Shown piece by piece: positions 1,492 to 41,733 of a stretch of 64,000 bases of DNA. This DNA comes from Guillardia theta CCMP2712 (lineage: Eukaryota > Protista > Cryptophyta), in contig NW_005434596.1 of assembly GCF_000315625.1 (NCBI RefSeq), forward strand, positions 273,009 through 337,008, in the 5' to 3' direction. Below the pieces are notes generated by a model. It saw nothing but the letters and a program-made list of their open reading frames with translations. It was not told the DNA's origin and made no database searches. Both the position numbers and the translations under genes were made by a program. Numbering within the stretch: position 1 is the stretch's first letter; each line of letters starts with the position of its first letter.

Positions 1492-1495
1492 TACC

Positions 1496-18062: not shown

Positions 18063-21000
18063 TTACTCGGCAGGTTGTCGAGCAGCCGAGCCGAAGTCGG
18101 GGTTCTTCCTTCGCTCCTCCTCGAGTCTCTGCAGCAGCTGTCAGCCTCGTCCTCCGGTCCTCCTCGCTCCTACCTGCATCACGACTGCCTGCATGTGCTC
18201 GAGGTTGTGAACTTCAAACTTCTCCTTGCATCCCCCCGCTGCCTCTCGCTTACTCGGGTACTGCAACATCGTTAGACTGCAAGCCTCCAGACCCAGCCCC
18301 AGGAGCTCAAGCGAGGCATCAGCAGGACATCACGGGTGAAGACGAGGGAGGGCGCGAGGAGGAGGAAGAGGAGGGGACTAGCACAGGCCTTACGTTCTCT
18401 CCCAGCGCGAGCTCAAGTCTGGAGGACTTGAGGTTGAGTAGGTTGAAGGCAGGGGCCAGCTCGATGCAGTTGCTGCTCACAGAACTCAGAAGGGAGGGCA
18501 CAAGACAAGCAACCGACCTGAAGAGAGCTTGCCGACAGAACACGTACAGACCCAGACGAGCTCGCGACAGAGCCACAATCAGCCTCCTCACGTCTCGCAA
18601 GTGTCCGACAGTCTTGGTGCGCACCAGAGACAGCAGGATGTAGTCGTTCTGCTGCCCCTGGTACTTGTCCACCGTCGAAATCTTTGGCGGCATCCCCACC
18701 CCAGGGATGGACGAGCAGCGGAAGCGAGCCACGTCCTGCAGGAGGGCAACTTGCCCGTTGTACGTCGACAGGATGGTGATCTTGTCGGCCGGGTAGCCGA
18801 TGATGCGCATGTACATGTAGACAGCGATGATGTACTCGGCTTCGGCGAGGTTCTGATAGAAGAAGGCAGTCGGCTCGCTCTCTCCCACTCCCCCAAGATC
18901 CTCCACGTTCACCAGCTGGAACTGATGAGCAAAACCAGCGTTGGCCAGCCGGAACATCTCCCGCCCTGTCACGTGCTCCATGTCCCCGAGCGACCGATAT
19001 CGCCAGTTGTACAGCTTGGCTATCTCTGGCCTGGCTCGGCCCTGAGCATTGAGCTCGATGTAGGGGATCCCCAGGCGGACGAAGCGAGAAAACAAGCTTT
19101 GGTCCATCCTCGAGTACTTCTGGAAGGCAATGTTCTTGATCACCGGAGGAAGCTGGTTGTGGTCGCCGATGAGCACGACGCGCTTGAGCCGGCACTTGTT
19201 GCCCCTTCTCGGCTCCTGCAGCAGCATGGGGATGAACGTTTCGATCTCCAGGATCTGTGCAGACTCCTCCATCACCAGCGAGTCGAACTCGAAGCCCGAC
19301 TCGATAAAGTCGTGCCGTTTCAGCGCCGCGTGCGTGCATGTCATGGCGATGATCTTGGCCTGTGTGGTCACAAGGTACTTGGCTCGCTCCTGGTAAGTTC
19401 GGAGGATCTCAAACGCTCGGCATTCCTCCAAGAAAGTGAACATGTACTGCACAAGCAACGTCAGCATCACTGTCAGACCCTCCAGCGCCTTACCTTGAGG
19501 TGTTGGAAGCAACCTTGAGCCGCCCTCATCGCATCCTTGCTATCCATGCTCGAGTTGAAGACTGACTCCGGCGCGTCGTTGAAAAACTCGTGGAAAGGAA
19601 ACTGTTCGATGATCTTCGTCGCGTCGTTGCAGTCCTTGACGCGATCCTCAAACTCCTCCCACCTTGCAACGATGTTGAACAGGAAGAAGTGCTGTGCCGT
19701 CTCGCACGAGTACTCCACGTCTGCTGTGATCCCTATGCTCCGAGCCAGCCGCCCCACCTCCTCCAGCAGCTCCAGCCGCTTCCCCAGCATGTACTGGACG
19801 CGTCCCCACTTGGAGAAGTCTTCCTCAGTCTCGAGCGTCTCGGCCTCGTGACCCAGGCGCAGGAGATGTCGCTCGTCGATGTCGAGAGCAGCGATCTTCT
19901 CGAAGATGTCGTTGAGCGCCTGGTTCGAGTGAGTCACCAGCAAGATCCTCTGGTGAGGGAAGTTGTGGTAGATGTTGGAGATGATCTGTACGGCGGTGTC
20001 TGTCTTGCCGGTACCCGGGGGGCCGACGACCTGTGCGAAGCCTTCGTTGGTCCCAGCAAGAATTGCATCCACCTGAGCGGGAGTGAAGCGGATGGAGTTG
20101 GTCTTTCTCTTCAGCTCAGGGTAAGGACCTGGCTCGGGAGGAAGGTAAGACTGGCAGACCATGGCAGCATCGCCCTCGCTGCTGGCTGGAAACTGAACGC
20201 GGAAAGGAGGAGCTACCAACCCCTTGGCGTTAGGCTTGAACTCGATTTTCTTCCCAGGAAAGCTCTCCGTCACATGCTTCTCGTCCAGGAACGTGTCGTT
20301 GAAGTCCACAGTCTGCAATGGGCTCAAGGCCGTGTAATGAGACTCTTGCGGATCTCCATAGCCGAGCAGAACATCGTGAAGCCACTCGGGAACCACGATG
20401 TTGGTATTCATGAGATCTCTGATACACTCCAAGATCGCCTTGAAGTTGTTCTCCTGCGCCTTGCGCTTCATGATCACATTGAACGTCTCGTACACAGGAT
20501 CTCCCCCGTGTTGTGCCTTGTAAGCAGCATCGATCGCGTACTGAGCCGAGTTCAGTCTCACTCGCACCTTCCTCTCTTGTCCCTGAGGCAAGCCTCTCGA
20601 CTGCGGGTCGAGGTTGTTGAAGATTTTCCCATCAGAGTCCAGCATGCCGACCACCTCGCACCCCCTGATGTACTCGATACAGAAGTCTTCCTTGCACTTC
20701 CCTTCCGTATGAGGAGGATGCTCGCCTGCCTTATACCTGGCCTTGATCGTGAGCAGAAACAGCACGTCGTGCTCTCTGAAAGTCTCCCACTCTCGTCTGA
20801 GCGTGTGGTCACGCATTCCTTGCAGCGAATAGGTCGCTTCGCCCACGACCCGCGCAGGCTTCGTTTCACCGAGGTTGGGCTTGGAGACCTCTATGACTGA
20901 GAAGGAAGTGAGAGGAAGGGACGACCGAGACCATCCCTGGAACACCGTTCTCCCGTCATCTATCCTTGGCCTCAGACGCAAAGCAACGTCTTCCACATCC

Positions 21001-23518
21001 TGGCGTATCTCGTAGGTGCTTTCAAGACGGAAGAGGTTGAAGTTGCGAAGCAGGTAGTCATGAAACGTCAAGTACTGCAGGTTCAGCTTGGGTAACGCAA
21101 GGACCTGCTCTCCAGTGAAGTTGATAGACGGCACTACGTGCTCATCCCACAACAGGTTTTCAGTTGGATAAAGGGGAAGTGCATTGATAGCATCCAGCTG
21201 CGAAATCCGACGCTCATGGTATGCAACAGCAATCTCCAACATAGTTCTGTGATCCAACCAAGTCAGCCCGGCCGATTCATCTTCGAACGGTATCAATCTG
21301 ATCTTGCGCAACAGCTGTGATAGCTGAGTCTTGTTCAGCCTCGACAAATACACCCTTAGACTGTCCTTGTTTTCAACGGCTCCAATGTTAGCAAGTGCAA
21401 ATTCCTTCATAATGTCAGGGAACAAGGAGTAGGCATGCCTTTGCACGAGTTGGATACGACCATAATGCCTCGCAAGCATCTCATCACGGCTCAAGGGCAT
21501 ACCAGTGTGCTCATTGATTTCAAAGTCCAAATAGAAGCTCAAAAGATCAAGAAGTTGATTGAAGAGTCGGCCATCTGGGCGCTTAGCGAGGTTTGCAAGG
21601 CGACATCGAATGACGAAATGGTGATCAGAGAGCAGCGCCAAGAAGAATCGGCGGGTTGGCAGTTGAGCAATCAGATCAATCAAGAATTCCAACACCCTTT
21701 CCAAGTATCGCCTCAGTTCGAATTCAAACTTGCCATCTGCCGGGATTGTGGACAGTTGTTGAAAGAAGACCTCGAGTAACTTTGGAAGGAAGTGATCTTT
21801 CAACTTTTCCAAGCCTTCTTTCTGCACTTTCTTTTGTAATGTCCTACAGGATCAAGCGATGTCACTGTAACCTTCAACCAAAGAATATCAAAAGTTACCT
21901 CCATTTCTTCTCAAGGTGAGGAGCTTTTCTAAGTTCTAGCTCCAACCTTGACTTGCTCAAATGTAGCCAAAGAGGCAATGAAACTTGAAGCAAGCATGAG
22001 TTCCTGACCATTGTGTTCTCCAAGCTCTGGAAGCTGTGAATCAGAAATACTACGATGAGGCTCCTTTCTCTATGCGAAAGCTCCTTCTTGCCATGCAGAA
22101 TGGTCACGCTCTTGAAAAATTCTGAGAAAACCTGCTCACGCTCCTGAAACGGCTCCCAAGACATGACCTATGGAGGAGTTAGAAAGCAACTAGAGCTGCA
22201 AACGTAGGCTTCACCTGTTCGCGAAACTTCTCGTTCACCATGCAAACCAAAGAGAGAATGTGAGCGTCTGTAGCTTTCGATGGGTCATAGTTGGGCCATA
22301 GGTACTTCTCGAGGTATTGGCTGTATTCCAAGATCATCACTTTGTTCAACGCAAAGTTCGATGGCAGAAGTTCTTCTTTGTACAACTTAGTCACGAGTGC
22401 TGGATCCCAAGGCTTCGTCTTAGACCCTTTCCAATGCTCCTCAGCAATTGCCATCAACTTATCACTTTCCAGCTTTCGCTTCGTCGGAATGGCGTTGCTA
22501 TCATCCCTGACTTTCTTCTTCTTCTTTTTATCACAAGCTCCAGAATCTGCCTTCCTCTTTGTTCCCGAGGTCTGCTCAGCCTGTTCCTCCTAAAGCTCTT
22601 CGTCAACTGCGACGGTTTTCGCAATATTACAAATACCTCAGCTTCCTCCTGCTCATCATCATCTTCTTCTTCCTAAAATCAAAGCATTGAATCAATAAAG
22701 GGGATCAAAATAGATATCTAGCACCATTTCTTCGTCTTCATCGACATCTTTGGCATCATTGGTTTCGGCACCAGCAGCTTCTAACTGACCCTGTTCTTTT
22801 CCACCATCATGTGATTCTTTTGTTTCCTTTGGTTTTGCTGGCTCGCTGCTGGCCACTGCAGGTACCTCCTTGCTCTGAGCTGCTTGTGGAACTTTGGTGC
22901 CTGCTGACAAGCGAGTATCAAGGGATCAAGGATCATACATAGTAATCTTCGTATGGATGAGAGGTGCGTGTCCTCGAATGATGAAACAGGAAATCTCACC
23001 TGCCGGGCTTTTCTGAGGAGTGCTAGCAGGTTTCTCGGGAGCAGACGCAGGGCTAGGGGTGGGTTCTTGTTGTTTCTTGGGGGACTCTTGTGGTGCGGCC
23101 GTCTTGCTCTTGGCTGGGGACTTCGCCGCTTCAGGTTTTGACGTCTCAGCCGGAGTAGCAGCAGGCTGCTGTTCCTTGGACACTGCAGGTTCTGGTGCCT
23201 GCGCTGCTGGAGCAGGAGCCTTCTCGGCTGGAGTAGCTTCCTTGGCAGGAGACTGCTCTGGTTGGCTGGTTTCAGACGCCGCCGGAGCGCTCGTCTGCTG
23301 GCTCTGCAGGTGAGTCTTCAGACGATCACTTAAAACAGCCTTGACGCCTGAAGTCGGGAGGTTGCGAGCCTTCAACTCGGCTTTCAGCTGGTCCACCTAG
23401 GATGGGAAGCAATCAGTGACGAACCATGTTGGTAAGGTTATGAGCAGGTGAAGTCAGATGAGAACAAATGAATCACCTTCAACTTATCGACATCAGCGAC
23501 AGAGAGGTCCCCTGCCAT
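18063..23518 (-). CDS. AQR: Intron-binding spliceosomal RNA helicase Aquarius with an N-terminal SAP domain
   Basis: [58 protein letters not shown] (Walker A), [40 protein letters not shown]. Upstream exons encode [28 protein letters not shown] (SAP) and splice in frame through short introns. Confidence 0.95.
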
Positions 23519-27470: not shown

Positions 27471-30400
27471 GTGGAGGAGGCAACAGGGCCCTCACCTGAC
27501 GACGTTGGTCCTGTGCATCTTGTGATTGAAGGCACGGGAGTACTTGACAAAGTCCGCGAGGAGCTCCTGGGTGAGGTCATGCTCGGTCCTCGGCACCCAG
27601 GAGGGAGGGAGGGGGTCTCGTCCTTCGAAGTACTTCCCCAGCAGGTATTGAGCTGCTACCATTGAATCGTGCTTTGCGGCTTCCAGGTACAGCTCAGCTG
27701 CTGCGACACTGTACTCCAACCTGGTTGCCGCGGCATCCTCCAGCTGTTCTCTCAGCTCGAAGACTCGCTCAGAGTACTTCTGTCGGAACGACGACATGCG
27801 TCTCCTCGCTTCCTTCCTGCCCTTGCTGGAGTGCGAGAGCTTCACTTCGGACTTGCCGAGGGCTTCAGTCTCCTGGTGCAGTCGCTCCTGAGCAACCAGC
27901 AAGCTCCTCTCTGCGCTCTCCTCACTTCGCTTCAGCCTGTCCATGGATTGTTTGATGTTGCTCGCCATCTCCATCTTCTTCTTCGCACTCTCAGCCTGCA
28001 TCCTGGCCTTGAGCTCGTCAGCCTCTGCTCGCAGCCGATCCATGCTCGCGACCGCGTTGTCGATCTTCCACCTGCCAGCGTCACAGCAGCGTCAGCGTCA
28101 GGCCCCACACGACCGAGTCATACTTCTGGAACTTGAGGGCCTTTCGCGCCGCGTGCACCTCTTGTTTGAGTTTGACCACCCGTGACCTTGACATCCGCAT
28201 TGACCGACTCATCTCGATCGGGGAAGTTGCCTTCTGCATCACTCCGGTACGCACATACCTTAGGAGCTGCGAGGTCTCGAGCTCCTCCTTCAGCTGGAAG
28301 CTCGTCTCATCATGCTCCTCTTGGATGTCTTCCTCGCTCTCTTGAGAGCTCATGATAGACTCCATGCTCTCTGTCTCATACACGTTTGCAAACATGTTTC
28401 GCACCCCCACCCCCACTTTCCGCAGCACAGCAGTGAGATATACCAAGAACAACTCGTAAGACATCGCCTTCATCTCCATCTCTCCACGAACTCGCTGAAT
28501 CTTCTTCACCAGCGCTGCGGCGCTCTCTTTTGATATCAGGCTAGGGATGATTGCTGCATATTCCTGCAGCACTTTGTAGAAGAGACTGGAAAGAGCGAGG
28601 AGTGAGCGAGAGCCGGCAGGATCTTGACTCACCTGAAGTTCATACTCATTAACGACTTGCCTCCATAGCCCAGCTCGATCTTTTCCAGCTTGACAATCTT
28701 CTCGAAGAGAGTGCGGTCCTTGCACAGTGAGCGAATCCTCCTGCTTCTCAGCTCCTCCAGCTTGTCCTCGTCTGTTGTAGCAACCTTCATGTAGTAGTTG
28801 GCCAGCTCCTGAAGGCACGAGGGTCATTCGATCGCAACTACACCTCCTTGAGATAATACCAACTGAGCCTCTGGTAGCCCCTGGGCCGCAGCTCGCTTCC
28901 AATAGGCAGCAGCTTTCTCTGCGTCCAGGGCAACTCCCTCTCCTCTCGCACACAGGACCCCGAGGTTGTACTCGGCGACAGCATACCCTTGTTCCGCGCT
29001 TCTCTCCAGCATCTCGACCGCAAGCGCCATGTTCTTCTTCACGTTCATTCCGCTCAGCAGGGCGATGGCGTACGACAGCTGCGCCTGTCTGTGCCCGTTC
29101 TCAGCTGCTGCCTTGAACCATCGGATCGACTCCTCGGGGTCGTAGAACCTGGAGGAGCGCTGCGAGTGAATGGCTCCGAGCCGGAACTGAGCGATGGCGC
29201 TGCCCCTTTCAGCCGCAAACGACAAGTAGGAGAAGGCTTCCTGCATGTCCCCCTCGACGCCTCTTCCTTCCAGGAAACAGATCCCCAGGCTCACATGCGC
29301 TTCCAGGCTCCCGTCCCTGATCGCCTCCAGGAAGTAACTCACCGCTAGCGCCTCGTCCCTGCCCACGACCTCCCCCTCTGATAGAGCAGCCCCAGGAAGT
29401 GCTTGGCCTTGGCGCTCCCCCGCGCAGCAGCTTCTTGGCACCACCTGAGCGACAGGTGCGAGAGCTTAGGCAGGTACCTGCCTTGGACGTACCACATGCC
29501 CAGGTTGAGCTGAGCCTCCAACAAGCGCATGTCTTGGGCGGCAACATGAGTGATGGGGGCTGGAATGTTCCTGAAGTCGTCAGCCAATGAAGGCGTGAGG
29601 TGAAACTGATCTTTGAGGTAGTTGCTGTGCAAGCATCATCATCGTAGAATCGAGGTGCAGTGAGTTTTTGTCTCACCTTGGGAACTTGTCCATGTTCTCG
29701 TCAAGGAGCTGCGACAGGGCCAACCAGGCTTGTTTGTATCCCAACGACTTTGCCACGGGGCTGAAGTAGAAGGGGAGAGGACCGCATTCCATCACAACAA
29801 CAACAACATCCTTCCTGTCCAGGAGCTGCGGATGTTTCAAGTTGATGCCACCGCAGGTGCGATAGATCCGAATCGCCTCATGTCGATTCTGAGCGAAGTT
29901 GACCCCGTGCCACAGGGCGTCTGCCACTTGCAACGAGGCCACCTCAGACTGCTCGTGCATGCTCTTCTCTAGCTCCTGCACGCTCTCTCCAACAGCCTTG
30001 AGGAAGTCCTCACAGCACATACGCAGGCAGATGGAGAGATGGTTGGGACCTGGAGGGAGGTCCAGAGGGCACGTTGCATCTTCGTCGAAAGAAACAATGA
30101 TCGAAGATCGCGCAGGCATGTTGTGCACAAACACTCTCCCACCGTAGAGCAACTTCGCCGATTTATCCCCAGCTTGATCTCTCGATGAGTACAAATAAGG
30201 TTCCACGTAGAAGGAGCCGCTGTCGAATCTCGACTCATTGGTGACCTTGCACTTCAAGAATGGCCCAACAGGATGCAGCACATGCAACAGCCTCGGCGAG
30301 CAGTGGAGCTCGACATCTGTCACCCGCATGATCGCTCGCTCGGAGGGCTGGGCCACCAGAACCGCATGCATCGCCTTCTCCTTGGGTGTTCCTCTCCTCC

Positions 30401-31936
30401 CGACATCGACCTCAGGCGCTTGCAAGGATGTGACGGATCCTCCTCCTACAGTGCGCAAGGCGTCATAAGGATCCCTGGATATGCTCAAGTGCTGACTCTG
30501 AACCTGCCGCTGAGACCCTCTGCTCATCATGACCCCCCTGGATCCCAGTCCTTCTCTCGTCTTGCTCCTGTGGGTCGACAGGTTGTCTCTGGCCTCGACG
30601 CTTTCAAGCAGACGAGACGCAACAACCGACACTTCATCTGGAAGAGTCCTTGGCTTCCGGCATTGCTTGCATACAATGTCGCCCTTGGAAACGTTTCTCG
30701 AGTACTTGTTCTCGTTCCAGCAGCCGCAGTTGGGGCAGAGATACTGAGTGAAGACTGTCGAGCCCTCGGCACTACTGTCATGCCCCCTAGCAGCCAGCAG
30801 GTAGTACTTGAGAGCGTCATTGGCATCCTTTTTCATCCCGATTCCCATGTGGTTCAATCGTCCCAGCTCATAGGCAGATTCGTATATCCCGTTCAAAGCC
30901 GCTCGTTGGTGCCAGGACGCGGCTTCTGAGTAGTTTGGAAACTTCATCTTGGAATGTGAGGGGACCAGCCATGATACAACAGAAGGCATGTGATGAAAGA
31001 CTTTGGCTTGCTTTGTTCTCATCGCAGTCGATTGACTGCATGCCCACGTTATGACCGAAGGCAATAAATGCCAACGTAATCTCCTATCAACCTCGACAGG
31101 GTCAACAGGCTTGATTCCTTGCGAGTACATCACAGCAACTTTATGCTGCGACAAGGCATGTTCTTGTCTGGCTGCTTTCAGGTACCATCCCATGGCTTTT
31201 GCCATCAGCAGACCCCCCTCGCCGACATCCTCCGCTGCCTCACCTGCTTCATCTCTGGCATCTTGTGCCTTGACGTGCGCTGCTGACTCGGTTTCAAACC
31301 TCCATCCCAGACGAAACTGAGCCTCTCTGTGGCCCAACAGTGCTGCCTGTATCATCCACTTCCATGCTGATTCGGTTTCCCTACGAGACTTGTACCTAGT
31401 CAGAGCAAGTACCTGACGGGCAACAGTCAGCGCGCGCAAGACATGCTGCAACGCTACCCCTAGCTGGTAAGATGCTTCAGCATGGCCTGAAGAGATGGTT
31501 GAGACTTATCCTTCAGCAGTTGTAGCATCACCTTCGTTCGCAGCTTTCTTGAGCCATGCAGCAGCCTTCTTTGCGTCTTGCTGGGGCGACCCCTGTCCTC
31601 TGAGCCACATGTTGCCGAGCTCGAAGCACGACTCTCTCTGCGCATGATAGCAGGGTGAGGGAACGTCAGAAACCGACGGGCAGCATACATGTCCTGAAGA
31701 AGCAGACTTTGAGAACCAGAGAAAGGCGGACTTGAGGTTCTTTTCTTGACCAAGGCCATGGAGGTAGCACTTGGCCAGCACCTGACACTGCAAGTCAAGG
31801 CTGGCGAAGGACAGGAAGCAGCAAAGGTAGGTTTTCTTCCTACGTATTGGGCCTCAACGTCCCCTTTCTTGGCTTGAAACCAGGCGCTGCTGGGATTGAT
31901 TGTCATCCATGCTTGCTCTGCTTTCTCTGACGACAT
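26309..31936 (-). CDS. Large Sel1-like repeat protein with an internal zinc ribbon, an Ig/CARDB-like segment and a coiled coil
   Basis: Many SLR units (AQFRLG..Y..G.GV..D...A..W...AA.QG) across ORFs 26454-27470, 28824-29444, 29673-31451 and 31460-31936; CPNC-x18-CKQC; coiled-coil exon 27492-28043. Assumed to be one gene; the 5' end is uncertain. Confidence 0.8.
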
Positions 31937-34202
31937 GACTCCAACCTTCTCTGGCAGGAGACGGACGAATCGGCAACGTGCTAGAGCTGGATCACCCCAT
32001 CTCTCCTCAGTCTGCCTTGGATCAGGCCGTGTCGCCTCCTGGAGGCTGGGATGATCAGGTAGCTAACGTAGTCTAACTGGTTCGAGTCCTCAAGCCTCTC
32101 ATGATGTCAACGTCGTCGAGCTCTCATGTCCAGTGCTTCACAGCTCTCGTCATCGACCACGGCTGAGAGCAAACAGTTGTGTCATGCATGTGACCAGCAT
32201 GCTGGTGTGGTGGACTCAACTGCCCGGCGTTGAAACAACCCGCTTTTCAACCCGCTCGGCTGCCCCCCCCCCCCACTGGCTCGGAATCACTTTAGGGCCG
32301 GGGATGAGGGGTGAATTCAACCGGATGATGGTGAAACGAACAGCAGGCATGGAGGAGGTCAGGGAGGGAGGATAACGCTTGTTGCTGCAAGGCTTACGAG
32401 CTTCGCGTACCCTGTGCTCGTCAACCTCATTCCAGATTCCTCTGATGAGGTACAAAGAGACGAATGCCAGCATCGAGACATTCAGAAGCGATCAAGCACG
32501 CTCATGCCCCTGCATAGCATCTGGGTACTGTGATCTTTCATTCAACCCTTTATTCGTAGCCAGCAAGTCAGTCTGCTGTATGTACTTCTTTGAGATTCAA
32601 TGGCTCGTCCTATACGTGTACTGGGGTCACTACTCGTTGCAAGGAAATCAATCAGTTTAGCAAAGTGTAGATCGATCACTCATCGGATTACGTGCTTATG
32701 CTTGCGAGCGTTTCAAGAGATATCTTATTATCAGTCGCAGCTTCTCAAGTTGGCCTATGCAAGTTTGCTTTTCCTTGTAAAAAGCATCTCTGCGTCTCTA
32801 CTCGGCTCGCTAAGTCATTATTTTTCTTGCACAATGCCCTATCGGCCATGTTTCGCAGCCTAGCAATCGAATTTCAACCATGGCAAACCATTCCCACGAG
32901 TTTCCTATAAGACACTTTCTCCTATTTATTTTGCATTTCGTTCAATGGTTGCCTTGTACTCCAAACTTGTTTCGTCCAGGCCTTAATTTTCTCCCCGTAG
33001 CTGCTACGCCTGAATTATGATACTTCTCGGCGCGATCACTCACTTCTTGAGTTCTCATCGTTGTGTCCATCATCCCGTTCACCGTCTACCTTCCCATCTC
33101 ATGCTGCTGCATGCCGCTTCATCGCATGCATCTACCATGCTGGTCCTTGATACATAGCCTCATTGATCGGAGATCGCGAGGGTTCCGGGACATACGACCC
33201 TCCAGTGGACGTAGACTCAATCTGTACGATCTTTACTTCATACAGATAAAACAAGTGAAACATTTTGTACCAAACAAAGAAATTTTAATAACTCTAAAAC
33301 TTCAGCAAAACTTTTTTGTCCGTACATATAAGTATAATAGCGCAAGAACATCAGTACAACTCTACTACCGCTAAGGTCACCATTTCAGAGCTTTTCTCCT
33401 CCACCCCTACTTCTTGCTGCACCCCTATGACCCTCTTATACTACCCCCCACCAAATGGTTTTGACCGTAGATTTAGCCCAGGCTCACCAAATCGATTCCC
33501 TGCATTATTCCTCCCCTATGAAATTTCGAGTTTGACTACCCCTGCTACCCCAAGGTCAATTCTCTCTACTGCGCCTGACAACTTCTATTCATCACCCCAC
33601 CTCTTTGAAATTTCAATGACCCCCCCTCACTACGATGACCCCCCTGTTCGTATAAAAACAACCTCTAGAGAACACCTCCACTGTTGCTTATGGCAGTAAC
33701 CCCACCCCCAATTCTAAAGTAGTTGACACCCCACCCTCAAAATGATAAGTCATTTTTGTGAACATGCGAAAAAAAAAACATAATTCCTTGTACCCCTACC
33801 CCCTCGGAAGAAGCATTACTCCCCGACAATTCCATTCGGCCCCCACACCCTCTAAAATTTTGTACCCTACCCTGCCTTCAGATGTCCTCAGAACACCACC
33901 CCCATCCCTTGGACCCCCCTTGTTGTCTGCTGATACCCCCTGAAGCCCTGCTCCCACCCCCAATATCCGCACCATTGGTGTCATCAATACCAGTACTTTT
34001 GCCTACCGGGGGTGTGTACTACCCTTTCTCCCCCAGGATAACCCCATATTTCCCCTTCTACCACCCCCTGTTGCTACTGCACCCCAGACCCTCAAAGCGC
34101 CATGGCTGCGCTAAGTTGAGGAAGGAGGAATCTTGGGTGCTCGTTCCTTGCGCTTCCTCCTCATCCCCGTCCCCCTTGCTTTCTACGTTCTAATCAAACT
34201 TC

Positions 34203-37200
34203 ATGTCGGGTGTCCACCTGTCCGCGGAGGTGCTGCAACGCATCTCTGACAAGAGGAAGGAAAAGGGCAATCCGACCCTGACCATTGAACAAGTGTCAAG
34301 GCATAATTCGAAACATGATTGTCTTATTGTGGTCAATGAGATGGTCTTTGATGTTTCTTCCTTTCTCCATAAACATCCAGGTGGAATGTCAATCATCCTC
34401 AATCAGGGGGGGAAGGACGTCTCACACATTTTCTTCCGCAATCACAGCAAGCATGCCCACTCTTTCCTGCCAGACTTGTTTTGTGCGGATTTGATTACCA
34501 GCAAGAAGCAAGATCTTGATAGGATCACACAGATCGTGAAAGTTAAGGAGATTGCTGCACAAATCGAGTCGCCACGAAAGGATTCCCCGCGAGAAACCAG
34601 TGCGTCCTTGGTCTATGACGTTGAGCTTTCGTCTCCCCATGGTTTCGTGCGCGAACGGGTGACGAAGTTTGATTCTCCCAGGAAGTCGGAGCTCGACGAA
34701 TCTCCTCGATCACAGAGAGACTCAGACTTGGCTTCGGATGACGACAGCACTCATGGAGCTCTCAACTCCCAGTTCTCGGTCCCACCAGTCATCATTGAAG
34801 AGACGGAAGCAGAGGTGGCAGGCATGGAGGAGAGTCCGCACAATGCCCTCGATGGGCACATGCTGGAGGAGATTTTATTTGACGTACATTCCGGCCGCTC
34901 TTCTCCCACGAATAGGAACCCTAGCAAGAAGATGAATGGCAGCAATGGTAAGTTGGAGAGTGCGTGTCCGTTCATGGCTATCGCCATGGCACACGAAGCG
35001 AAACAGCTTGAAAATGGACATGGGAATGGAGAAAGTGAAATCACCCTTTCGAACAGTTTCAAATCAGCTAATGGAGATGGTGGAATTTTGGCTCACATGT
35101 CGGGTTCGTTTGGCTCCAGTAAGAAGTTGCCGATCAACATGTTGAAACCCCTTCACTCCCTGTCCTCCTTCTCGCAAAGACACGGCCAAAGTAAAGATGT
35201 GGCGATGGAATCACCTCGCTCTGTGAGATCGAAAGAGGACTTGTCTTCATCTAAGGGTGGCACCTCTCACGGGAGGAACAGCAGCAGCTTCAATCATTCT
35301 CGCAAGTCGCGTGGAACGAATATCAACAAAGCTGGAGGTGTCTATCGAGGACGAGTGCGTCGAAAGCAGCACCATACACGTAAGAGTCAGGTGCCAGCTG
35401 TTGACATGGAAGAGTGGGGAAATCATTCTTATTTCATCGTTACTTCATGGAACAAGATGCTGCAAAAAGCATCATATGCTGATCTTGGACTTGCAATCTA
35501 TGATTCTGTCAAGGACAACGAGACATTAGAGCCGCTTTTTCGCTTCACAAACAAATCCGTACAGGGAACTAAATTTGTAGACATGCTTTCCAGCATCGTT
35601 GAGAACATCACGTCACCAGCTGATATTTATGTGAAGATTGCAGAACTTGCTCCAATGCATCACAGGAAGGGAGTGAAAGGATCCCATATGCCTCTCATGA
35701 AAGAAATCATCCTCGGAGTCTTCAAGCATACATTAGGCGAAGATTTTTCTGCCGAGGAAACCAAAGCGTGGATATGGATGTGGTCCTACTTGTCACGTGC
35801 GCTCGAGCATTCCTTGGTCGATGTAGGCTCAACCCTCGGCGTCGTTCGGGAGTCATGGGAAATTATTCTGGAGAAATACGATCCTGCACATCTAGGGGAA
35901 ATGGTTTACGATCATTTGTTCAAGCTCGCACCAAATGTTACCTCCTTGTTCACCAAGTCGAGAGAATACATGGCAATCAAGATGGGAGACATGTTGTGCA
36001 TGTTAGTATCTTTTGCGGACGATCCAGATAATATGAAGCAGCAAGTTTCCTGGCTTGGATTGCGGCATGTCAACTACAAAGTCAGGCCACATCACATACC
36101 ATTAATGGGACCTGTCTTCATGACCGTGCTCGCAGAGGCATCGGGCGAGTACTGGACGGAAGAAATGGAGAAATGCTGGGGAATCGTATTCAATATGGTT
36201 TGTGAGAACATGTCAGAAGCCATTCAGGATGGCGAGGATTATGCGCTCTCTTTAGAACACACAACGCAATTCATGCAGGAAAGAGTTGATCGATCGGAAC
36301 TATCCAAAGTCATGAGAACTGAACTCCTTGTTCACTGCCCGTCGCTATTTGAGAAACTTGAGGGCGATGCAGCTTCTAACGAACGGCGCAACAGCCTGTT
36401 GGAAAGGACTAAAGCATTGCGAACTGCAAGTACCACGAGCAGTATAGACAGAACTCCCAGTACTCAAAGAGATAATCAAGTTGATCATGGGGTATAGATT
36501 ACTGTTCAGTGCTTGGAAGCTAGTCACTGATGAGTTTTGTGCAGGTCTCTCATCTTATCTCATCCAGCGCAACTCGCAGAAGAGACTCAGTGCTTGATGA
36601 TGCGCACAACTCATCGTCTCAGAGTAGGAAGTCAGTGAAATCGAAATGCAGAAAGCTCACTTCAGTGGCAGGAGGCAGACAAACACGTTTGAAGTCTACC
36701 TTTACTCCAGTTGCGAGCTGTGAATCAGACGTTGAAGCTCAGGTTAGATGTTTTCTTCATGCCTTCTTCGGTTGAAACATGTATATCCCAGGAGGAGTTC
36801 GCGATCTCCATTTACGACTTTACTGTGGAGGTTGCTCAGCTGGTTTGGGAACCTGAGAAACAGCTTGAGCAGATCTTCGTTTATGCGCCAACCTTCTATG
36901 CATGGTCTGCAAGATAGCTCTCATTTTAATTCTGATGAGCATGCCAGTGGAATGAGGAGCGAGCATTTGAAGGCTATCGCTCAGTCCTTGGAGAGCGGAG
37001 TTGCTAGTGTGATCGGAGAGGAGTGAGTTGAATCTGATCATGGTGTTGAGAAGGCTGATGTTTTTTTCTGCAGTTGGGGTGAACACATGAGCGACTCTCT
37101 CAGATGGGTTTGGAAGATGATCAGTGATGTGAGGAGCTGAGACCTGTTTTGACGCGACCTGATCCCCTTGCAGTCACTCTCAAGTGAGCTCGACGGTTTG

Positions 37201-40200
37201 CGCGAAAAGAGAAGTGAGATCGTCTTGCATCAGTGGCAACACATGAAAGATAACGTCGATGTCGAGGTGAGAGCGAAAGATGATTCTTCTCATTCCCCCC
37301 GTACTGAACTTCTTGCTCACAGTATCTTGGAGAAGTCTTCTGGAAGCACCTTAACAACATCGTACAGTCGTGCTAAAATATTCGCTTGTCGCTGACTTGA
37401 GATGTTTGCAGTCACCGGAGCAGACGCATCTCTTCAGAAGATCTTTGCGCATGTGAACCTTTGCATCTATCTGGTCTTTTATATTTGACCTATGAGGTCT
37501 AGGTGGGGGAGTCTCCTGTTTCATATCATGGACATGCTCGTGGTCAGCATAACCGAGCCTGCTGTAATGTCCACCTGTATGGATACAACGTGTTGAGAGA
37601 TGCGGCAGGACTTTTTCGATCAACTCTTTGAGTTGACCTTGAGACATGTGCGGTACGGAGTTCGATCGGAGTACCTGAATCCCTTCGGACAAGCTCTCAT
37701 CTTCACCTTGCAAGATGTGATGCGAGAGATGGGTTGTTGGCCATGGTGTGATAGAGTGAACAGATCATGGAGACTGAATTTGATGAAAAATCAGAGAAGG
37801 CATGGAAAGAGGTGATTCGGCTGATAATGCGTTCATCAGAAAGTCATCGTAATGCATCGAGTCAGGTGTGGAAAAAAGCGGCAAACAGCATGGCAAGGGG
37901 CCTGAACATGGGAGGGAATGCGATCACGCATGCATTGGTGGAAGGAAATGCAGATGCGCTCCAAGAGGCAATCAGCTCTGCTCCTCGGAGCAAGAGAGAC
38001 GAGTGGTTATGTCAGGTTGATAGCGACATGAGGAGAATCGTTGCGAACATGATCGGTTGGCTGTCAGATTGATATCAACGGAGCAGTGATCTCTCCACTC
38101 TACTGGGCCTTACACGACGGGAAATACTCCATCGTCGAATTCATCTTATGGTAGAGATTCAATGTCTCGCATGAACGGCTCTGACTGACTGCAATATTCA
38201 GCGACTTGTTAACCATCCGTGCAGACATTCACGGCTACTACTACGGCAGAGAGGTGATAATGAAGTTGAGTGATGCGGCATCCTGCATGCTGACACCTGC
38301 ATGACAGAATCTGTTCAGCTACCATGAGAACCTGGTAGAGGAACTTGGCCGTGAGTGCCCGCACTTGATGTGCACACTACTTGATGGCCTTCTGTGGCAT
38401 TCGAAAGAGAAACTTCCCGGCAGAATGGTTCCTTTGCCATCAGTATCAGAAGGGTCAAGGTTTGACGTTGCCGTCGCAGGTCCGCGTGAACTACTACATC
38501 CGTGATATCTACGGGGACCCCGACCTACAGAAAGATCCCTGGAGCTCACCCTTGGCACACCTGATCAACTTCGGTGCGGCGAGCGAACGTTGCTGCCCGA
38601 GTTCCATCTGACATACTGTATGTACAAGGTGGGAATGACGTGTTCAAGCACCCTGTTGTCCACAAGACTCTCGATTTGAAATGGAGCAAGTTCGGGCTGA
38701 AAGTCTTCTGCCTGAAAGAATGTGTCTACTTTGCCATGATCGTCTTCTTCATGATCGGATACGTGAGGGATGAAACCCTCTGCGATCCTCAGAGTGAAGT
38801 AAGTCGACGCCTGCTCCTCTTGCGGGACTGACCCGCTCTCCAGACCATGAGGCTGGTCCTGACAGTTTTTGCGAGCTTGACTCTCTTCGCTCAAGTAGAG
38901 CATCGTGCTATTATTTCTGTCAACTGACTGTCACTGCAAGGTCTACGTGGCATTTTCCCATATGAGGAAAAATCTGATGCTTCCCTTCTCGTTCGGGCCC
39001 TTCACGTTTATCCTCCCGAGGTCAGAAGAGTCTCATCGTGGGATGAGAGCATCTGACTGGCCTGCAAAGGACTTTTGCATCCTCGTGGAACCTGCTGCGA
39101 GTGGTGTCTTGCTCGTTGATTCTGGTTTCCTTCGCCGGGCAGGTGATGACTGGAGAGGAAATGAGACGGACAAAGGCGCCATGAATGGAGGGGGTCAAGC
39201 TAGGAGCAAATATGATGGAAAGTGGGGGGAGGAGGGTTTAAGCCAGCAGTGAGAGATTGAGTGGGAAGGAAATTGAGAGGAGGGGAGGACTTGGTTGACT
39301 TGAACAAGAATGATAGAAATCTGCCGTGATTGGTTATGTTGAAGCCTGACTGAAACTGCAGCATGAATGCAATTCCTGCGACAGCGCCGTCATGAACTGT
39401 ACAGATGTCACAAACACTACAGGAGGTTAATCGCGATTCTGCTCACCTGCCTGCCATGTTTTGACTGGTCAACAGCTCGAGAATTCTTCGTGTCTTCGTC
39501 ATGGTCTCTGCTTGCTAAGGCGAAAGGAGACGCGACGACCTCTTCAACCATCTCTTCAGCCAACGTTAACGACAACAGAACATCGCTCGCTATCGCTGCT
39601 GTTTTGCTATGGGCACAGATGTTCCAGGTCTCATCTCCCAATCTGCGGTGGGGACGAATTTTTGACTCTGTCTCTCTCTCCTCCTACAGCTCAGCATTCT
39701 TTCGACCCCAATGGCAGCGTTCATCTACACCATCGGCATCATGTTTCACGACCTGTCGCATTCGCTCTTCATGATCGTTATCCTCATCTTCGGTATGCTC
39801 CTCCTTTTCAACCCCCGCTTTCCTACACGCCTCCTCGTCTCCCTATCTCTCCAACGTTACCGTCCTCGTTCTATCTCCCTCCTCTCCCTCCTCTCTGCTG
39901 TCATCTATCTCCCCTCATCTACCTCCATCGCCCTCCCCTTGGTATTGCCTCGCAATCCTTCGGCTGCCACCCTCGTCCACCGGCTCCCTCTGTCTTGTTC
40001 CTCTCACCGTCTTGTTTCAGGATTTGGCTCTGCTCTTACTCTCATCGACGATCCTCCTTTCGATGAAGGATGGGACCAATCAGTTGTAGTCCTCCTGCAA
40101 GAGGTCGTCCTCTTCCTACCCTCCCCCTCCTCTCGTTCCTCCTCGCTCCCTCCCTCGCCCTGCTCCCTCTCCCTGCTCCCTCTTCCTCCTTGTGAACACC

Positions 40201-41376
40201 CTCTCCTGCCCAAGACCGCCCGCCCCCTCCCCCTCCCCCTCCCCCTCCCTTCCCGCCCTTCCTTCTGGCTCCCTCCTCCTCCTTCCTCTCCTCGTCGCGC
40301 TCTCTCTCTCTCTCTGCTTCCTCCATTCTTCGTGTTTTTACTGCAGCTGAGCAAGACAAACAGGTTCTGGGAGTGGCTCAGCCTTTGTATCCTGATATCT
40401 CAGCTCTAACCCGAGCCCTCCTCCTCATCTACGTAACGTAAGATCCTCCTCCTCCTCCTTGTCAAGAGCCTCCGTCCCCATCAATCAGTCCCTTGCTCTT
40501 CCCTCTCCTTCTCTCTCCTCCTTCTCTTCCTCCTCAGCTGACAGGCGGGGTAGGTGCGTGAACATCGGGCTGTTGAACATCCTCATCGCCCAGCTGACGA
40601 TCACCTACGACAAGCTCACCGCCGACAAGGAAGCCTTCGCCATGAAGCACAGGTGAATCAGGATGAGGGGAGGAGGAGAGAATTGAAACAGGCTGGGAGA
40701 AAGAATTGGAGAAATGGAAAGAAAGCTGAGGAGGAGGCAAGGGAGAGGAGAGGGGGGGAGTTGAGTACTGAAGTGAAGAATTTGAGAAGAGAAAAGGATG
40801 GGTGGGTGACGTTGAATGGCAGAGCAAGCATGTGCCTGGACATTGAGTGCTTCATCCCCTTGTCCTGGAAACGGTAGCTTCTCCTCTCCATCCCTCCTAC
40901 CCCTCCCCCTCCTCCTCCTCCTCCTCCTCCTCCTCCTCCTCCTCCCTCGATTATCTACGACTTACTCTTCCCTTCACAGGAAAATCTTCTGTGACCTTGG
41001 CTTTCATCTTCCTCTTAACTTCACAGCGAGCGACGTCGGTCCTGCAGGAGGAATTCAGGTCACTACCGTCCTCTGCCTCCCCGCTCGCTTGTTCACATCC
41101 TCTCACCTCCTTCTCTCCGCTTGCCTGCTCAACCACACGCCCTCCTCCCCTGCCGCCCCTCCCCCCTCCTCCCGCCTCCCGCCTCCCGCCTCCCGCCTCC
41201 CTCCTCTCTCCCTCCTCTCTCCTCCCTCCCTCCTCCCTCCTCCTTTACTCACTCACTTCTGATTATTTGGCGTGCAGGAGATCGAGAAGGACACCTGCGA
41301 GCGCTACGTCCCGGATCGCATCATGCGCTTCACAGGCGATGCGTCGCCGGAGGATCCCTGGCCGGAGGTCCAGTAG
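34203..41376 (+). CDS. Cytochrome b5 - 4x globin - ankyrin-like - TRP-like cation channel fusion protein
   Basis: Cyt b5 (VFDVSSFLHKHPGG...FFRNHS); globins with SW/F8-His motifs (LAPMH, LGLRH, LTLRH) plus one degenerate copy; ankyrin-like GNAITHAL and SPLYWAL; pre-S1 FKHPVVHKTLDLKW; TM exons; S6 NIGLLNILIAQL; TRP-helix-like KHRASMCLDIE; stop TAG 41374-41376. First intron 36492-36544 is phase 0 and keeps the frame. Confidence 0.85.
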
Positions 41377-41633
41377 AAGGAGGAGGCACGAAAGTTCAAA
41401 CTCATGTGTATAAATTGTGTTGTACTTCTAGGAATCCCTCACCCTCCCTCTTCCCTTTCCCCTCTTCCCTTCTCCCTCTCCCATGCTCTTTTTTCGCTGC
41501 TCCTGCCACCCAACAATTCCTTCCTTCCTCCTCCTCCTCCTCCTCCTCCTCCTCCTCCTCCTCCTCGTCAACCACCACCAGCATCATTCGGCTTGCTAGA
41601 AGAGGGTGTAAGAGTACTCCATTTATTGCATGC

Positions 41634-41733
41634 NNNNNNNNNNNNNNNNNNNNNNNNNNNNNNNNNNNNNNNNNNNNNNNNNNNNNNNNNNNNNNNNNNN
41701 NNNNNNNNNNNNNNNNNNNNNNNNNNNNNNNNN
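41634..41733. other. Assembly gap (100 N)
   Basis: Run of N. Confidence 1.

What the first reader, a model, noticed from the sequence alone, without database searches (positions are those of the whole stretch)
34203..41376. Candidate heme-gated ion channel: cytochrome b5 + four globins + ankyrin-like repeats + TRP-like 6TM channel in one gene
Seen: the ORF track shows only the 764-aa first exon, but short GT-AG introns (first at 36492-36544, phase 0) carry the frame on. It continues through a fourth globin, two ankyrin-like repeats (GNAITHALVEGN, ISPLYWALHDGK), a pre-S1 motif (FKHPVVHKTLDLKW), hydrophobic TM exons, a pore-like DDPPFDEGWDQSVVVLLQEVLG, S6 NIGLLNILIAQL (40561-40596) and FAMKHRASMCLDIE, ending at TAG 41376. 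Established: LLNxLIA in S6 and the following helix (TRPV-type WKxQRAxxILDxE) are TRP-superfamily hallmarks. Characterised globin-coupled sensors mostly signal through enzymes or chemotaxis receptors, and cyt b5 reduces globins. Inference: a channel that senses O2, NO or redox state directly, with its own electron-shuttle domain, possibly driving aerotaxis or Ca2+ signalling in a flagellate alga. I know of no characterised channel with this architecture.
Basis: partly seen in the sequence, partly recalled or inferred. Interest (0 to 1): 0.95.

Follow-up and report, generated by a model that had tools for sequence, protein, structure and literature searches.

The report
Globin-and-cytochrome-b5-carrying TRPV-like ion channel gene
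One 30-exon gene of the cryptophyte alga Guillardia theta joins a cytochrome b5, three haem-type globins and one degenerate globin to a TRPV-like cation channel. It looks like a built-in oxygen, nitric oxide or redox sensor wired to an ion pore, belongs to a large algal family, and I found no paper describing it.

Summary
Window 34203-41376 (+) is one gene of 30 exons and 29 GT-AG introns encoding 1582 aa. A 4886-nt Guillardia theta transcriptome contig (L001) carries the uninterrupted ORF and maps colinearly onto window 34120-41430.

- **Architecture:** cytochrome b5, globins G1 and G2, a degenerate globin G3 (proximal His replaced by Phe), globin G4, then a TRPV-like subunit.
- **TRPV-like subunit:** 2-3 ankyrin-like repeats, linker domain, pre-S1, S1-S6, TRP helix and a C-terminal strand.
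- **Sequence evidence:** a 73-sequence family profile hits TRPV3 at E 1.3e-20.
- **Fold evidence:** the AlphaFold model (pLDDT 90, pTM 0.85) matches only TRPV1-6 among the top structural matches listed (VIA Z 19.7).
- **Family:** 79 of 90 cluster representatives carry a globin in front of the channel. The proximal His of the channel-adjacent globin is kept in 78 of 80. Named members come from cryptophytes, dinoflagellates and Klebsormidium.
- **Cytochrome b5:** it sits at the N-terminus in close relatives and at the C-terminus in distant ones.

Haem binding and gating by O2, NO or redox state are inferred, not shown. No paper on a globin-TRP fusion was found. The scan has already found paralogues of this gene on other DNA of the same genome, with the same reading.

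The parts
34120..41430 (+). Transcribed region, as far as the cDNA contig L001 reaches: 30 exons, 29 GT-AG introns
   Evidence: blastn of L001 on the window gives 30 colinear blocks with exon bodies 100% identical. Intron boundaries are unique GT-AG solutions.
34203..41376 (+). CDS of the 1582-aa protein P0012: ATG at 34203, TAG at 41374-41376
   Evidence: Exact mapping of P0012. An in-frame stop lies 12 nt upstream of the ATG.
34281..34490 (+). Cytochrome b5 domain (aa 27-96) with HPGG (aa 58-61) and the second His in RNHS (aa 79-82)
   Evidence: Pfam PF00173, E 5.5e-18, 65 bits against a cut-off of 23.7. Motif positions.
34500..35402 (+). Ser/Pro/Arg-rich linker (aa 100-400) with no detectable domain, probably disordered
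   Evidence: No Pfam family at E<=5. Composition read from the sequence.
35415..35837 (+). Globin G1 (aa ~405-545), F helix APMHHRKGV
   Evidence: Pfam Globin E 7.7e-9 on the excised piece. Coordinates.
35838..36272 (+). Globin G2 (aa ~546-690), proximal His in LGLRHVNYKV (H622)
   Evidence: Pfam Globin E 1.2e-11. PDB phmmer hits 3wfw at E 1.6e-12, with the His aligned to RRHVKYGV.
36792..37206 (+). Degenerate globin G3 (aa ~814-905, exons 4-7). It aligns only to helices E-H of G1, and F8 is Phe (APTFYACGM)
   Evidence: No Pfam hit. BLASTP of aa 780-1035 against aa 400-700 gives E 3e-19, with G1's 'APMHHRKGV' opposite 'APTFYACGM'.
37207..37901 (+). Globin G4 (aa ~906-1036, exons 7-13), proximal His H985 in LTLRHVRYGV and CD1 F946. 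Its H helix runs straight into the channel's first ankyrin-like helix
   Evidence: Pfam Globin E 3.4e-7. H985 is kept in 78/80 and F946 in 72/80 family members. AF2 model of aa 900-1582: pLDDT 90.3, pTM 0.84.
37902..38226 (+). Ankyrin-like repeats (aa ~1037-1110), including GNAITHALVEGN and ISPLYWALHDGK
   Evidence: Ank_2 reaches only E 0.14. Model residues 1-120 align to TRPV3 residues ~246-365.
38227..38693 (+). TRPV-type linker domain with beta hairpin, plus the pre-S1 helix (aa 1111-1212; W1209)
   Evidence: AF2 strands 123-130 and 134-139. The profile alignment to TRPV3 starts at pre-S1...LHMKW. W1209 is kept in 71/73.
38694..39701 (+). S1-S4 bundle (aa 1213-1391), with a Cys- and N-glycosylation-motif-rich, low-confidence S3-S4 loop (aa 1315-1370)
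   Evidence: Hydropathy, AF2 helices and the TRPV alignment.
39702..40620 (+). S4-S5 linker, S5, pore helix and filter (WDQSVVVLLQEVLGVAQP), and S6 with LLNILIAQL (aa 1392-1496)
40627..40853 (+). TRP helix (aa 1499-1517, KEAFAMKHRASMCLDIECF), aligned to TRPV3 IWRLQRARTILEFEK. The TRP-box Trp is Ala here
   Evidence: HMM alignment. Column counts A 66/73 and R 69/73.
41026..41373 (+). Conserved C-terminal tail (aa 1540-1582), with the strand GGIQ and the ...RFxG..SPxxPWPE motif
   Evidence: Nearly invariant columns in A1. AF2 strand 524-529. VIA alignments reach TRPV3 residue ~749.

Best explanation
**Shown.** This is a single Guillardia theta nuclear gene. Its 1582-aa product is a TRPV-like channel subunit of the TRP superfamily. 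The subunit holds 2-3 ankyrin-like repeats, a linker domain, a pre-S1 helix, S1-S6 with a pore helix, a TRP helix and a C-terminal strand. Its N-terminal extension carries a cytochrome b5 domain, three globins that keep the proximal His, and one degenerate globin. The extension is taken to be cytosolic by analogy with TRPV topology.

**Inferred mechanism.**
- The channel assembles as a tetramer.
- The haem of the channel-adjacent globin G4 binds O2, NO or CO, or changes redox state.
- G4's H helix is continuous with the first ankyrin-like helix, so that change is passed through the ankyrin/linker/TRP-helix coupling used by TRPV channels to the S6 gate. This opens or closes a cation pore.
- G1 and G2 add further haem sites, for cooperativity, a wider range or local chemistry.
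- Cytochrome b5 shuttles electrons from an external reductase to keep the globin haems ferrous, or to report the cell's redox state.
- The output would be a membrane-potential or Ca2+ signal that follows intracellular gas or redox state in a photosynthetic flagellate.
For: **One gene.**
- Exact 30-exon mapping of P0012 with unique GT-AG introns.
- The cDNA contig L001 is colinear with the window.
- Nine runs from five studies hold 0.54-0.58 of the locus's 31-mers. A fully spliced, exon-only message would give 0.540.

**Channel identity.**
- The family profile A1 hits TRPV3 at E 1.3e-20, from pre-S1 to the TRP helix. The 60 best PDB hits listed are all TRPV1/2/3/6 or their invertebrate relatives (OSM-9-like, Inactive).
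- AF2 model: pLDDT 90.1, pTM 0.85.
- The top 50 Foldseek matches are all TRPV (E 7e-12, more than 500 aligned columns).
- VIA gives Z 19.7 over 373 residues (rmsd 4.3 A) to TRPV3. The transmembrane part alone aligns to TRPV1 with rmsd 3.0 A over 263 residues at 20% identity.
- The S6 N-L-I-A residues, pre-S1 Trp and S1 Phe are conserved.
- The S4-S6 tetramer test gave score 0.32 against a best control of 0.00, with S4 packed on the neighbour's S5. This is only at the mark and may reflect memory of solved TRPV tetramers.

**Sensor link.**
- 79 of 90 N-terminal regions of family representatives carry Pfam Globin.
- F8 His is kept in 78/80 and CD1 Phe in 72/80 of the channel-adjacent globins. The globin-to-channel junction has a fixed length.
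- The globin-plus-channel model keeps pTM 0.84.
- Cytochrome b5 is N-terminal in 7 of 90. It is C-terminal in 7 of 10 long tails scanned, and also in P0085 and P0086. Both ends are cytosolic in TRPV topology.
Against: - No experiment shows haem binding, conductance or gating.
- The TRP-box Trp, which couples the TRP helix to the S4-S5 linker in TRPV channels, is Ala in 66 of 73 members. The S4-S5 linker Gly appears to be Ser or Ala. The coupling path may therefore differ.
- The filter of the cryptophyte clade (LGVAQP) has no obvious acidic residue at the TRPV position, so ion selectivity is open.
- Some family members have no globin (for example P0081). The channel may therefore work without one, or those sequences may be truncated.
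- The globins are of the flavohaemoglobin/single-domain type, which is mostly enzymatic, not of the sensor-globin lineage (PMC4101818).
- Read-level evidence for isoforms was not obtained.
Confidence: 0.55

Rival explanations
1. The TRPV-like channel is gated by some other stimulus, such as temperature, voltage, lipid, Ca2+ or mechanical force. The cytochrome b5 and globin chain is a tethered enzyme or buffer, for example NO dioxygenase, nitrite reductase, peroxidase or O2 store, placed at the membrane. It does not gate the pore, or at most modulates it.
For: The closest solved globins are haemoglobin-like flavoprotein-type and neuroglobin-type domains. PMC4101818 relates the G. theta globins to flavohaemoglobin-type and single-domain globins, for which enzymatic roles are thought most likely in microbes. 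A cytochrome b5 partner is what a redox enzyme needs. Some family members lack a globin.
Against: A mere tether would not need a fixed-length, conserved junction in which the globin H helix runs into the first ankyrin-like helix. It would also not predict a confident rigid model of globin plus channel (pTM 0.84). The globin is kept next to the channel in 79 of 90 representatives across distant lineages.
Confidence: 0.25
2. The globin domains no longer bind haem. They serve as a purely structural or oligomerising cytosolic domain, an extension of the ankyrin skirt, as in non-haem globins such as RsbR or phycobiliproteins.
For: G3 has clearly lost the proximal His and half of the fold, so degeneration does happen in this protein. 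Haem binding was not measured.
Against: F8 His is kept in 78/80 and CD1 Phe in 72/80 of the channel-adjacent globin. G1, G2 and G4 pass Pfam's Globin cut-off. The recurrent fusion with cytochrome b5, another haem protein, makes little sense without haem chemistry.
Confidence: 0.08
3. The fusion is an artefact. Two neighbouring genes, a cytochrome b5-globin gene and a TRP channel gene, were joined by a chimeric transcriptome assembly or by read-through. The usual products are separate.
For: Some relatives in databases stop after the globins: P0001 at 1060 aa and P0002 at 973 aa.
Against: - The frame stays open across all 29 canonical introns, with no room for a separate start. G4's last helix and the first ankyrin-like helix share exon 13.
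- The same architecture is found in independent transcriptomes and genomes: Hanusia phi (P0002) and its 82%-identical relative P0009 (MMETSP ORF flagged complete, 1470 aa), Chroomonas, Symbiodinium natans, Noctiluca, Polykrikos and Klebsormidium.
- P0002 itself continues past the globins into the ankyrin-like region up to window position 38469, so it is a truncated contig.
Confidence: 0.02

Closest known systems
Animal TRPV channels (TRPV1-6; Drosophila Nanchung/Inactive; OSM-9)
   Same: They share homology by sequence profile (E 1.3e-20) and the fold of the whole subunit. That covers the last ankyrin repeats, the linker with its beta hairpin, pre-S1, S1-S6, pore helix, TRP helix and C-terminal strand. 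The S6 motif LLNxLIA and the pre-S1 Trp are shared too.
   Different: - Only about 2-3 ankyrin-like repeats are present instead of six.
- The N-terminus carries cytochrome b5 and globins.
- The TRP-box Trp is Ala, and the S4-S5 linker Gly appears to be Ser or Ala (approximate alignment).
- The filter sequence is different.
- There is a long Cys-rich S3-S4 loop.
- Identity is about 15-20%. The lineages are algal (cryptophytes, dinoflagellates, a charophyte), not animal.
Globin-coupled sensors (HemAT, globin-coupled diguanylate cyclases and kinases; Leishmania globin-coupled adenylate cyclase). Named from my own knowledge; the group is also mentioned in PMC8717448 and PMC6027212, listed
   Same: The logic is the same: an N-terminal haem globin is fused to a C-terminal signalling output, so that gas binding is turned directly into a signal.
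   Different: Here the output is an ion channel, not an enzyme or chemoreceptor. There are several globins in tandem plus a cytochrome b5. The globins resemble flavohaemoglobin-type, single-domain and neuroglobin-type 3/3 globins rather than the sensor-globin lineage (PMC4101818).
The two 'chimeric' G. theta haemoglobins of Smith, Vinogradov and Hoogewijs 2014 (EKX33177.1, 1060 aa, = P0001; EKX39126.1, 1497 aa, = P0011; PMC4101818)
   Same: They are paralogues of this gene with the same cytochrome b5 plus three-globin front end. P0011 also aligns over the channel half.
   Different: The paper describes only the cytochrome b5 and globin domains and says nothing of a channel. The NCBI model P0011 lacks the S6 and TRP-helix exons. 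The window's own gene is not among the nine proteins listed.
Algal TRP channels already studied (Chlamydomonas crTRP1, PDB 6PW4; Coccomyxa csTRP, placed sister to TRPV/TRPVL/TRPA1 in PMC9242649)
   Same: They are unicellular-alga members of the TRP superfamily with an incomplete TRP fingerprint. PMC9242649 reports 7-9 of 12 residues for them; at least 8 of the 10 I could map are kept here.
   Different: Those channels have no haem domains. No direct comparison was made here.

Membership tests
TRP superfamily, TRPV-like | Significant sequence-profile similarity to solved TRPV channels over pre-S1, S1-S6 and the TRP helix | tested here: met
   hmmsearch of the A1 profile against PDB gives TRPV3 at E 1.3e-20 (profile positions 167-474 against TRPV3 425-715). 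TRPV1, TRPV2, TRPV6 and Inactive follow.
TRP superfamily, TRPV-like | Six transmembrane helices with a re-entrant pore helix between S5 and S6, and the overall subunit fold | tested here: met
   Hydropathy. AF2 pLDDT 90.1, pTM 0.85. The top 50 Foldseek matches are all TRPV. VIA Z 19.7 (373 aligned, rmsd 4.3 A) to TRPV3; TM part rmsd 3.0 A over 263 residues to TRPV1.
TRP superfamily, TRPV-like | [quoted passage not shown] | tested here: inconclusive
   - Kept: pre-S1 W1209 (71/73), S1 F1217 (64/73), S1 Y1224 (F/Y 50/73), S5 F1423 (66/73), S6 N1482, L1484, I1485, A1486.
- Not kept: the TRP-helix Trp is Ala (66/73), and the S4-S5 Gly appears to be Ser or Ala.
- Two aromatic positions were not mapped.
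TRP superfamily, TRPV-like | TRP box with the conserved Trp after S6 | tested here: not met
   A TRP helix is present and aligns to TRPV3 IWRLQRARTILEFEK. The Trp position is A1503, and Ala in 66/73 members.
TRP superfamily, TRPV-like | N-terminal ankyrin repeat domain of six repeats (TRPV subfamily) | tested here: not met
   Pfam Ank_2 reaches only E 0.14, 13 bits against a cut-off of 27.3. Structural alignment starts at about TRPV3 residue 246, so roughly the last 2-3 repeats are present. Globin G4 stands upstream in place of the other repeats.
TRP superfamily, TRPV-like | Homotetramer with domain-swapped S1-S4 / S5-S6 | tested here: inconclusive
   Complex prediction on S4-S6 x 4: score 0.32, best of 3 controls 0.00, runs agree in at least 93% of contacts, partner pLDDT about 61. 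In calibration the mark was reached by 21 of 30 solved one-chain pairs and 0 of 23 single chains. The job is unlike the calibration and a pass may come from memory of solved TRPV tetramers.
TRP superfamily, TRPV-like | Cation conductance | not testable with these tools
   Needs electrophysiology. The filter sequence LGVAQP gives no clear prediction.
Globin (3/3 myoglobin fold, haem-binding) | Pfam Globin above the gathering score, domain by domain | tested here: met
   G1 scores 36.5 bits, G2 45.6 bits and G4 31.2 bits against a cut-off of 22. G3 gives no hit.
Globin (3/3 myoglobin fold, haem-binding) | Proximal His F8 and Phe CD1 | tested here: met
   G1 has the His pair H486/H487 in the F helix (APMHHRKGV); the repeat alignment puts the first one at F8. 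G2 has H622 and G4 has H985. G4's His is kept in 78/80 and CD1 F946 in 72/80. G3 fails, with Phe at F8.
Globin (3/3 myoglobin fold, haem-binding) | Actual haem binding and ligand chemistry | not testable with these tools
   Needs spectroscopy of recombinant domains.
Cytochrome b5 | Pfam Cyt-b5 above the cut-off, with both axial His motifs (HPGG and a second His) | tested here: met
   PF00173 at 65.2 bits against a cut-off of 23.7. HPGG at aa 58-61 and RNHS at aa 79-82.
Globin-coupled sensors (sensor-globin lineage) | Globin of the sensor (S) lineage fused to a transmitter domain | tested here: inconclusive
   The fusion to an output domain is met. However, the nearest solved globins are haemoglobin-like flavoprotein and neuroglobin types, and PMC4101818 places G. 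theta globins with flavohaemoglobin-related 3/3 globins. It works like a globin-coupled sensor but is probably not of that lineage.

The most novel reading that the evidence does not exclude
This gene belongs to a large, undescribed family of ion channels gated directly by a gas or by redox state. These would be the first globin-coupled sensors whose output is an ion pore. They occur in cryptophytes, dinoflagellates (including the coral symbiont genus Symbiodinium) and a charophyte alga. They would turn intracellular O2, NO or redox state into membrane potential or Ca2+ signals within milliseconds. They could also serve as a genetically encoded gas-gated channel tool.
Probability: 0.45. Interest if true: 0.9.

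Novelty: new variant of a known kind. Interest (0 to 1): 0.8.

Why it matters
- **A new coupling.** Known haem-based gas sensors signal through enzymes, transcription factors or chemoreceptors. Known O2- or redox-sensitive channels sense through cysteines, hydroxylases or loosely bound haem. A channel with covalently attached globins and its own cytochrome b5 would be a one-protein path from gas or redox state to electrical or Ca2+ signalling.
- **Directly testable.** The idea can be tested by expressing the protein and recording currents under different gases.
- **Globins in algae.** It gives a concrete candidate function for the puzzling abundance of globins in photosynthetic protists, a puzzle raised in PMC4101818.
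- **TRPV-like channels outside animals.** It shows that TRPV-like subunits exist well outside animals.
- **Scale.** The family is large: 582 cluster representatives at E<=1e-3. It includes ecologically important dinoflagellates.

Tried and rejected
- **Read laying.** Those places lie inside intron 29. My own sandbox scripts read the whole window file: local translation, and local tblastn with proteins as queries. From then on I masked those places with N.
- **Pfam on single downstream ORF pieces.** This gave nothing useful, because the exons are too short.
- **Pfam on P0012 itself.** Ion_trans was seen only below its cut-off (E 0.022 and 0.002). The channel became clear only with the family profile and the fold.
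- **Exon-1 homologue search.** The length window of the search for homologous proteins hid the full-length protein. It was recovered by searching with a longer relative and a region.
- **Two-gene or chimeric-assembly reading.** Rejected; see the rival explanations.
- **Polycystin/PKD-type or voltage-gated-type channel.** Relatives hit PKD_channel and Ion_trans. I rejected this as the closest family because the PDB profile and fold searches rank only TRPV-type channels (TRPV1-6 and their invertebrate relatives) among the matches listed.
- **Paper searches.** Eight searches for a globin-TRP or globin-channel fusion found nothing relevant. The library lacks most subscription journals, so this is not proof of absence.

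Full report
**1. What is in the sequence**

The window is eukaryotic DNA from contig C78 of an 87-Mb, 669-contig assembly. The proteins it encodes carry the source name Guillardia theta. The ORF at 34203-36497 (764 aa) is real. It carries Pfam Cyt-b5 (aa 27-96, E 5.5e-18) and Globin (E 1.9e-20).

A search with this exon found only 42-58% identical cryptophyte paralogues of 708-1060 aa. One of them, the Hanusia phi transcript protein P0002, aligned on past the globins to window position 38469. Searching with P0002's C-terminal region brought up full-length proteins of 1256-1582 aa.

**2. One gene**

P0012 is 1582 aa (UniRef100_A0A7S4PAX6, MMETSP Transcript_46897, G. theta). It maps onto the window residue for residue in 30 segments. 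For each of the 29 gaps there is exactly one GT-AG intron that reproduces the protein.

- The stop codon is TAG at 41374-41376.
- Twenty-one introns (1-20 and 22) are 43-56 nt and intron 23 is 62 nt. The seven others (21, 24-29), all in the membrane part, are 106-260 nt and CT-rich.

The transcriptome contig that carries P0012 is L001 (JGI 3300017164, 4886 nt, ORF 84-4832). It aligns to window 34120-41430 in 30 colinear blocks with identical exon bodies. An in-frame stop lies 12 nt before the ATG.

Nine runs from five studies hold 0.54-0.58 of the sampled 31-mers of 34203-41400. The share expected if a run holds all exons and no introns is 0.540.

**3. The haem half**

Pfam on excised pieces recognises G1 (E 7.7e-9), G2 (E 1.2e-11) and G4 (E 3.4e-7), but not aa 805-950.

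- **Internal repeat.** Residues 822-1034 align to residues 460-671 (E 3e-19). This shows an internal duplication of a two-globin unit.
- **G3.** In that alignment G3 covers only helices E-H of G1. It has APTFYACGM where G1 has APMHHRKGV, so the proximal His is Phe.
- **Proximal His.** G1 keeps a His pair at H486/H487; the repeat alignment puts the first one at F8. G2 keeps H622 and G4 keeps H985.
- **Closest solved globins.** G2 matches haemoglobin-like flavoprotein domains best (3wfw, E 1.6e-12), with the His aligned. Neuroglobin and bacterial haemoglobins follow.
- **Cytochrome b5.** It has HPGG and a second His in RNHS.
- **Linkers.** Two long Ser/Arg/Pro-rich stretches (aa 100-400 and 700-812) have no domain.

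**4. The channel half**

P0012's own sequence reaches Ion_trans only below the Pfam cut-off. Its relative P0014 passes Ion_trans (33.5 bits) and PKD_channel (31.9 bits).

An exhaustive HMMER search with aa 1026-1582 found 582 cluster representatives at E<=1e-3 and 142 at E<=1e-30. From these I built a 73-sequence alignment, A1.

- **Sequence.** The A1 profile hits TRPV3 at E 1.3e-20, from the pre-S1 helix through S6 and the TRP helix. TRPV1, TRPV2, TRPV6 and Drosophila Inactive follow. The 60 best hits listed are all TRPV1/2/3/6 or their invertebrate relatives (OSM-9-like, Inactive).
- **Model.** AlphaFold2 with A1 gives pLDDT 90.1 and pTM 0.85. Only the S3-S4 loop is uncertain.
- **Fold, Foldseek.** The first 50 matches are all TRPV1, 3, 4 or 6, at E down to 7e-12 and with more than 500 aligned columns.
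- **Fold, VIA-align.** Z is 19.7 (373 residues, rmsd 4.3 A) and 19.4 (427 residues; model 1-539 against TRPV3 246-749). For the membrane part alone, rmsd is 3.0 A over 263 residues at 20% identity to TRPV1.

The match therefore covers the last ankyrin repeats, the linker with its beta hairpin, pre-S1, S1-S6, the TRP helix and the C-terminal strand.

By sequence the ankyrin repeats are only a hint (Ank_2 E 0.14).

I mapped the TRP fingerprint of PMC9242649 through the TRPV3 alignment.
- **Kept:** the pre-S1 Trp, the S1 Phe and Tyr, the S5 Phe, and the S6 N-L-I-A.
- **Not kept:** the TRP-box Trp is Ala (66/73), and the S4-S5 Gly appears to be Ser or Ala.

A four-copy S4-S6 prediction scored 0.32 against 0.00 for the best of 3 controls. 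The three runs agree in at least 93% of their contacts and the partner's pLDDT is about 61. S4 packs on the neighbour's S5. The mark was reached in calibration by 21 of 30 solved one-chain pairs and 0 of 23 single chains. The score is only at the mark, the job is unlike the calibration, and a pass may come from memory of solved TRPV tetramers.

**5. The family**

- **Globins.** Of 90 representatives with at least 100 residues before the channel module, 79 carry Pfam Globin and 7 carry an N-terminal Cyt-b5.
- **Haem pocket.** In an 80-sequence alignment of the last globin plus the channel, the F8 His is kept in 78 and the CD1 Phe in 72. The globin H helix joins the first ankyrin-like helix without length variation.
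- **Rigid junction.** The model of aa 900-1582 keeps pLDDT 90.3 and pTM 0.84.
- **Cytochrome b5 at the other end.** Seven of ten long C-terminal tails scanned carry Cyt-b5, and so do P0085 and P0086. Cytochrome b5 is thus attached at either cytosolic end in different branches.
- **Taxa.** Named members come from Guillardia, Hanusia, Chroomonas, Polykrikos, Yihiella, Noctiluca, Symbiodinium natans and the charophyte Klebsormidium nitens (GAQ91211.1, annotated 'cytochrome b5 isoform').
- **Paralogues.** The G. theta genome itself holds at least seven further loci with the module.

**6. How it most likely works**

Shown: the architecture, the single message, TRPV-type homology and fold, and conservation of the haem-binding residues next to the channel.

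Inferred: tetramer formation; that the N-terminal extension is cytosolic; haem binding; transmission of ligand or redox changes from G4 through the ankyrin/linker/TRP-helix path to the S6 gate; cytochrome b5 as the electron shuttle that keeps the haems ferrous; and a cation or Ca2+ signal as output.

I put this sensor-gated reading at about 0.55. A tethered-enzyme reading gets about 0.25, non-haem structural globins about 0.08 and an artefactual fusion about 0.02. The rest is left open.

**7. Comparison with what is known**

PMC4101818 described two 'chimeric' G. theta haemoglobins with a cytochrome b5 N-terminus, of 1060 and 1497 aa (P0001 and P0011). It did not mention a channel. The NCBI model of P0011 lacks the S6 and TRP-helix exons. 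The window's gene is not in that paper's list.

Eight full-text searches found no paper on a globin-TRP or globin-channel fusion. The searchable library is incomplete. Public databases carry these proteins only under automatic names.

The scan's own notes already hold paralogues of this gene on other DNA of the same genome, with the same reading, and a note on the lost proximal His in this very stretch. I used them only as leads and tested the claims here.

**8. Verdict**

The structural reading is supported and the function is inferred. I class the gene as a new variant of known kinds: a TRPV-like channel with a new sensor domain, or equally a globin-coupled sensor with a new output.

Noticed in passing
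window 41634-41733: A run of 100 N (an assembly gap) lies about 200 nt after the end of the transcript contig (41430). The low-complexity CT-rich and Ser/Pro-like ORFs around it are probably not coding.
   Followed up: no
P0011 (GUITHDRAFT_143733, paralogue elsewhere in the genome), alignment A1: The NCBI gene model of this paralogue lacks the S6 and TRP-helix exons: there is a gap in A1 between '...LLLVYVS' and 'RIFDDI'. This probably helped hide the channel from earlier annotation and from the 2014 globin survey.
   Followed up: partly
G000 loci C78:205520-208443(-), C78:218089-221103(+), C178:53782-56866(-), C178:78312-81681(-), C189:58479-60881(-), C192:75503-78434(+), C29:252784-255318(-): At least seven further loci in the same genome encode the TRPV-like module exon by exon. 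Two of them lie 52-68 kb before the window's start on the same contig.
   Followed up: partly
P0053 (Klebsormidium nitens GAQ91211.1), P0085, P0086, P0088 (Symbiodinium natans 'vhb'), P0096, P0105, P0111, P0127, P0129: Distant family members carry the cytochrome b5 domain after the channel instead of before the globins. The Klebsormidium protein is annotated only as 'cytochrome b5 isoform'.
   Followed up: partly
P0025 (Polykrikos kofoidii, 1661 aa), P0028 (2206 aa), P0100 (1755 aa): These proteins match the channel module in 4-5 stretches, and P0025 has two Ion_trans and two Globin hits. They may hold two globin-channel units in one polypeptide, or they may be chimeric assemblies.
   Followed up: no
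window 39143-39361, 39793-40020, 40104-40363, 40438-40553, 40653-40822, 40874-40979, 41059-41277: The seven introns in the membrane part of the gene are 106-260 nt and very CT-rich, with long Pro/Ser/Leu-like pseudo-ORFs.
   Followed up: no
window 1-33000 and 42000-64000: There are several other long ORFs, for example 2500-4566 (+) of 688 aa, 19473-21827 (-) of 784 aa and 29673-31451 (-) of 592 aa. They belong to neighbouring genes and were not examined.
   Followed up: no
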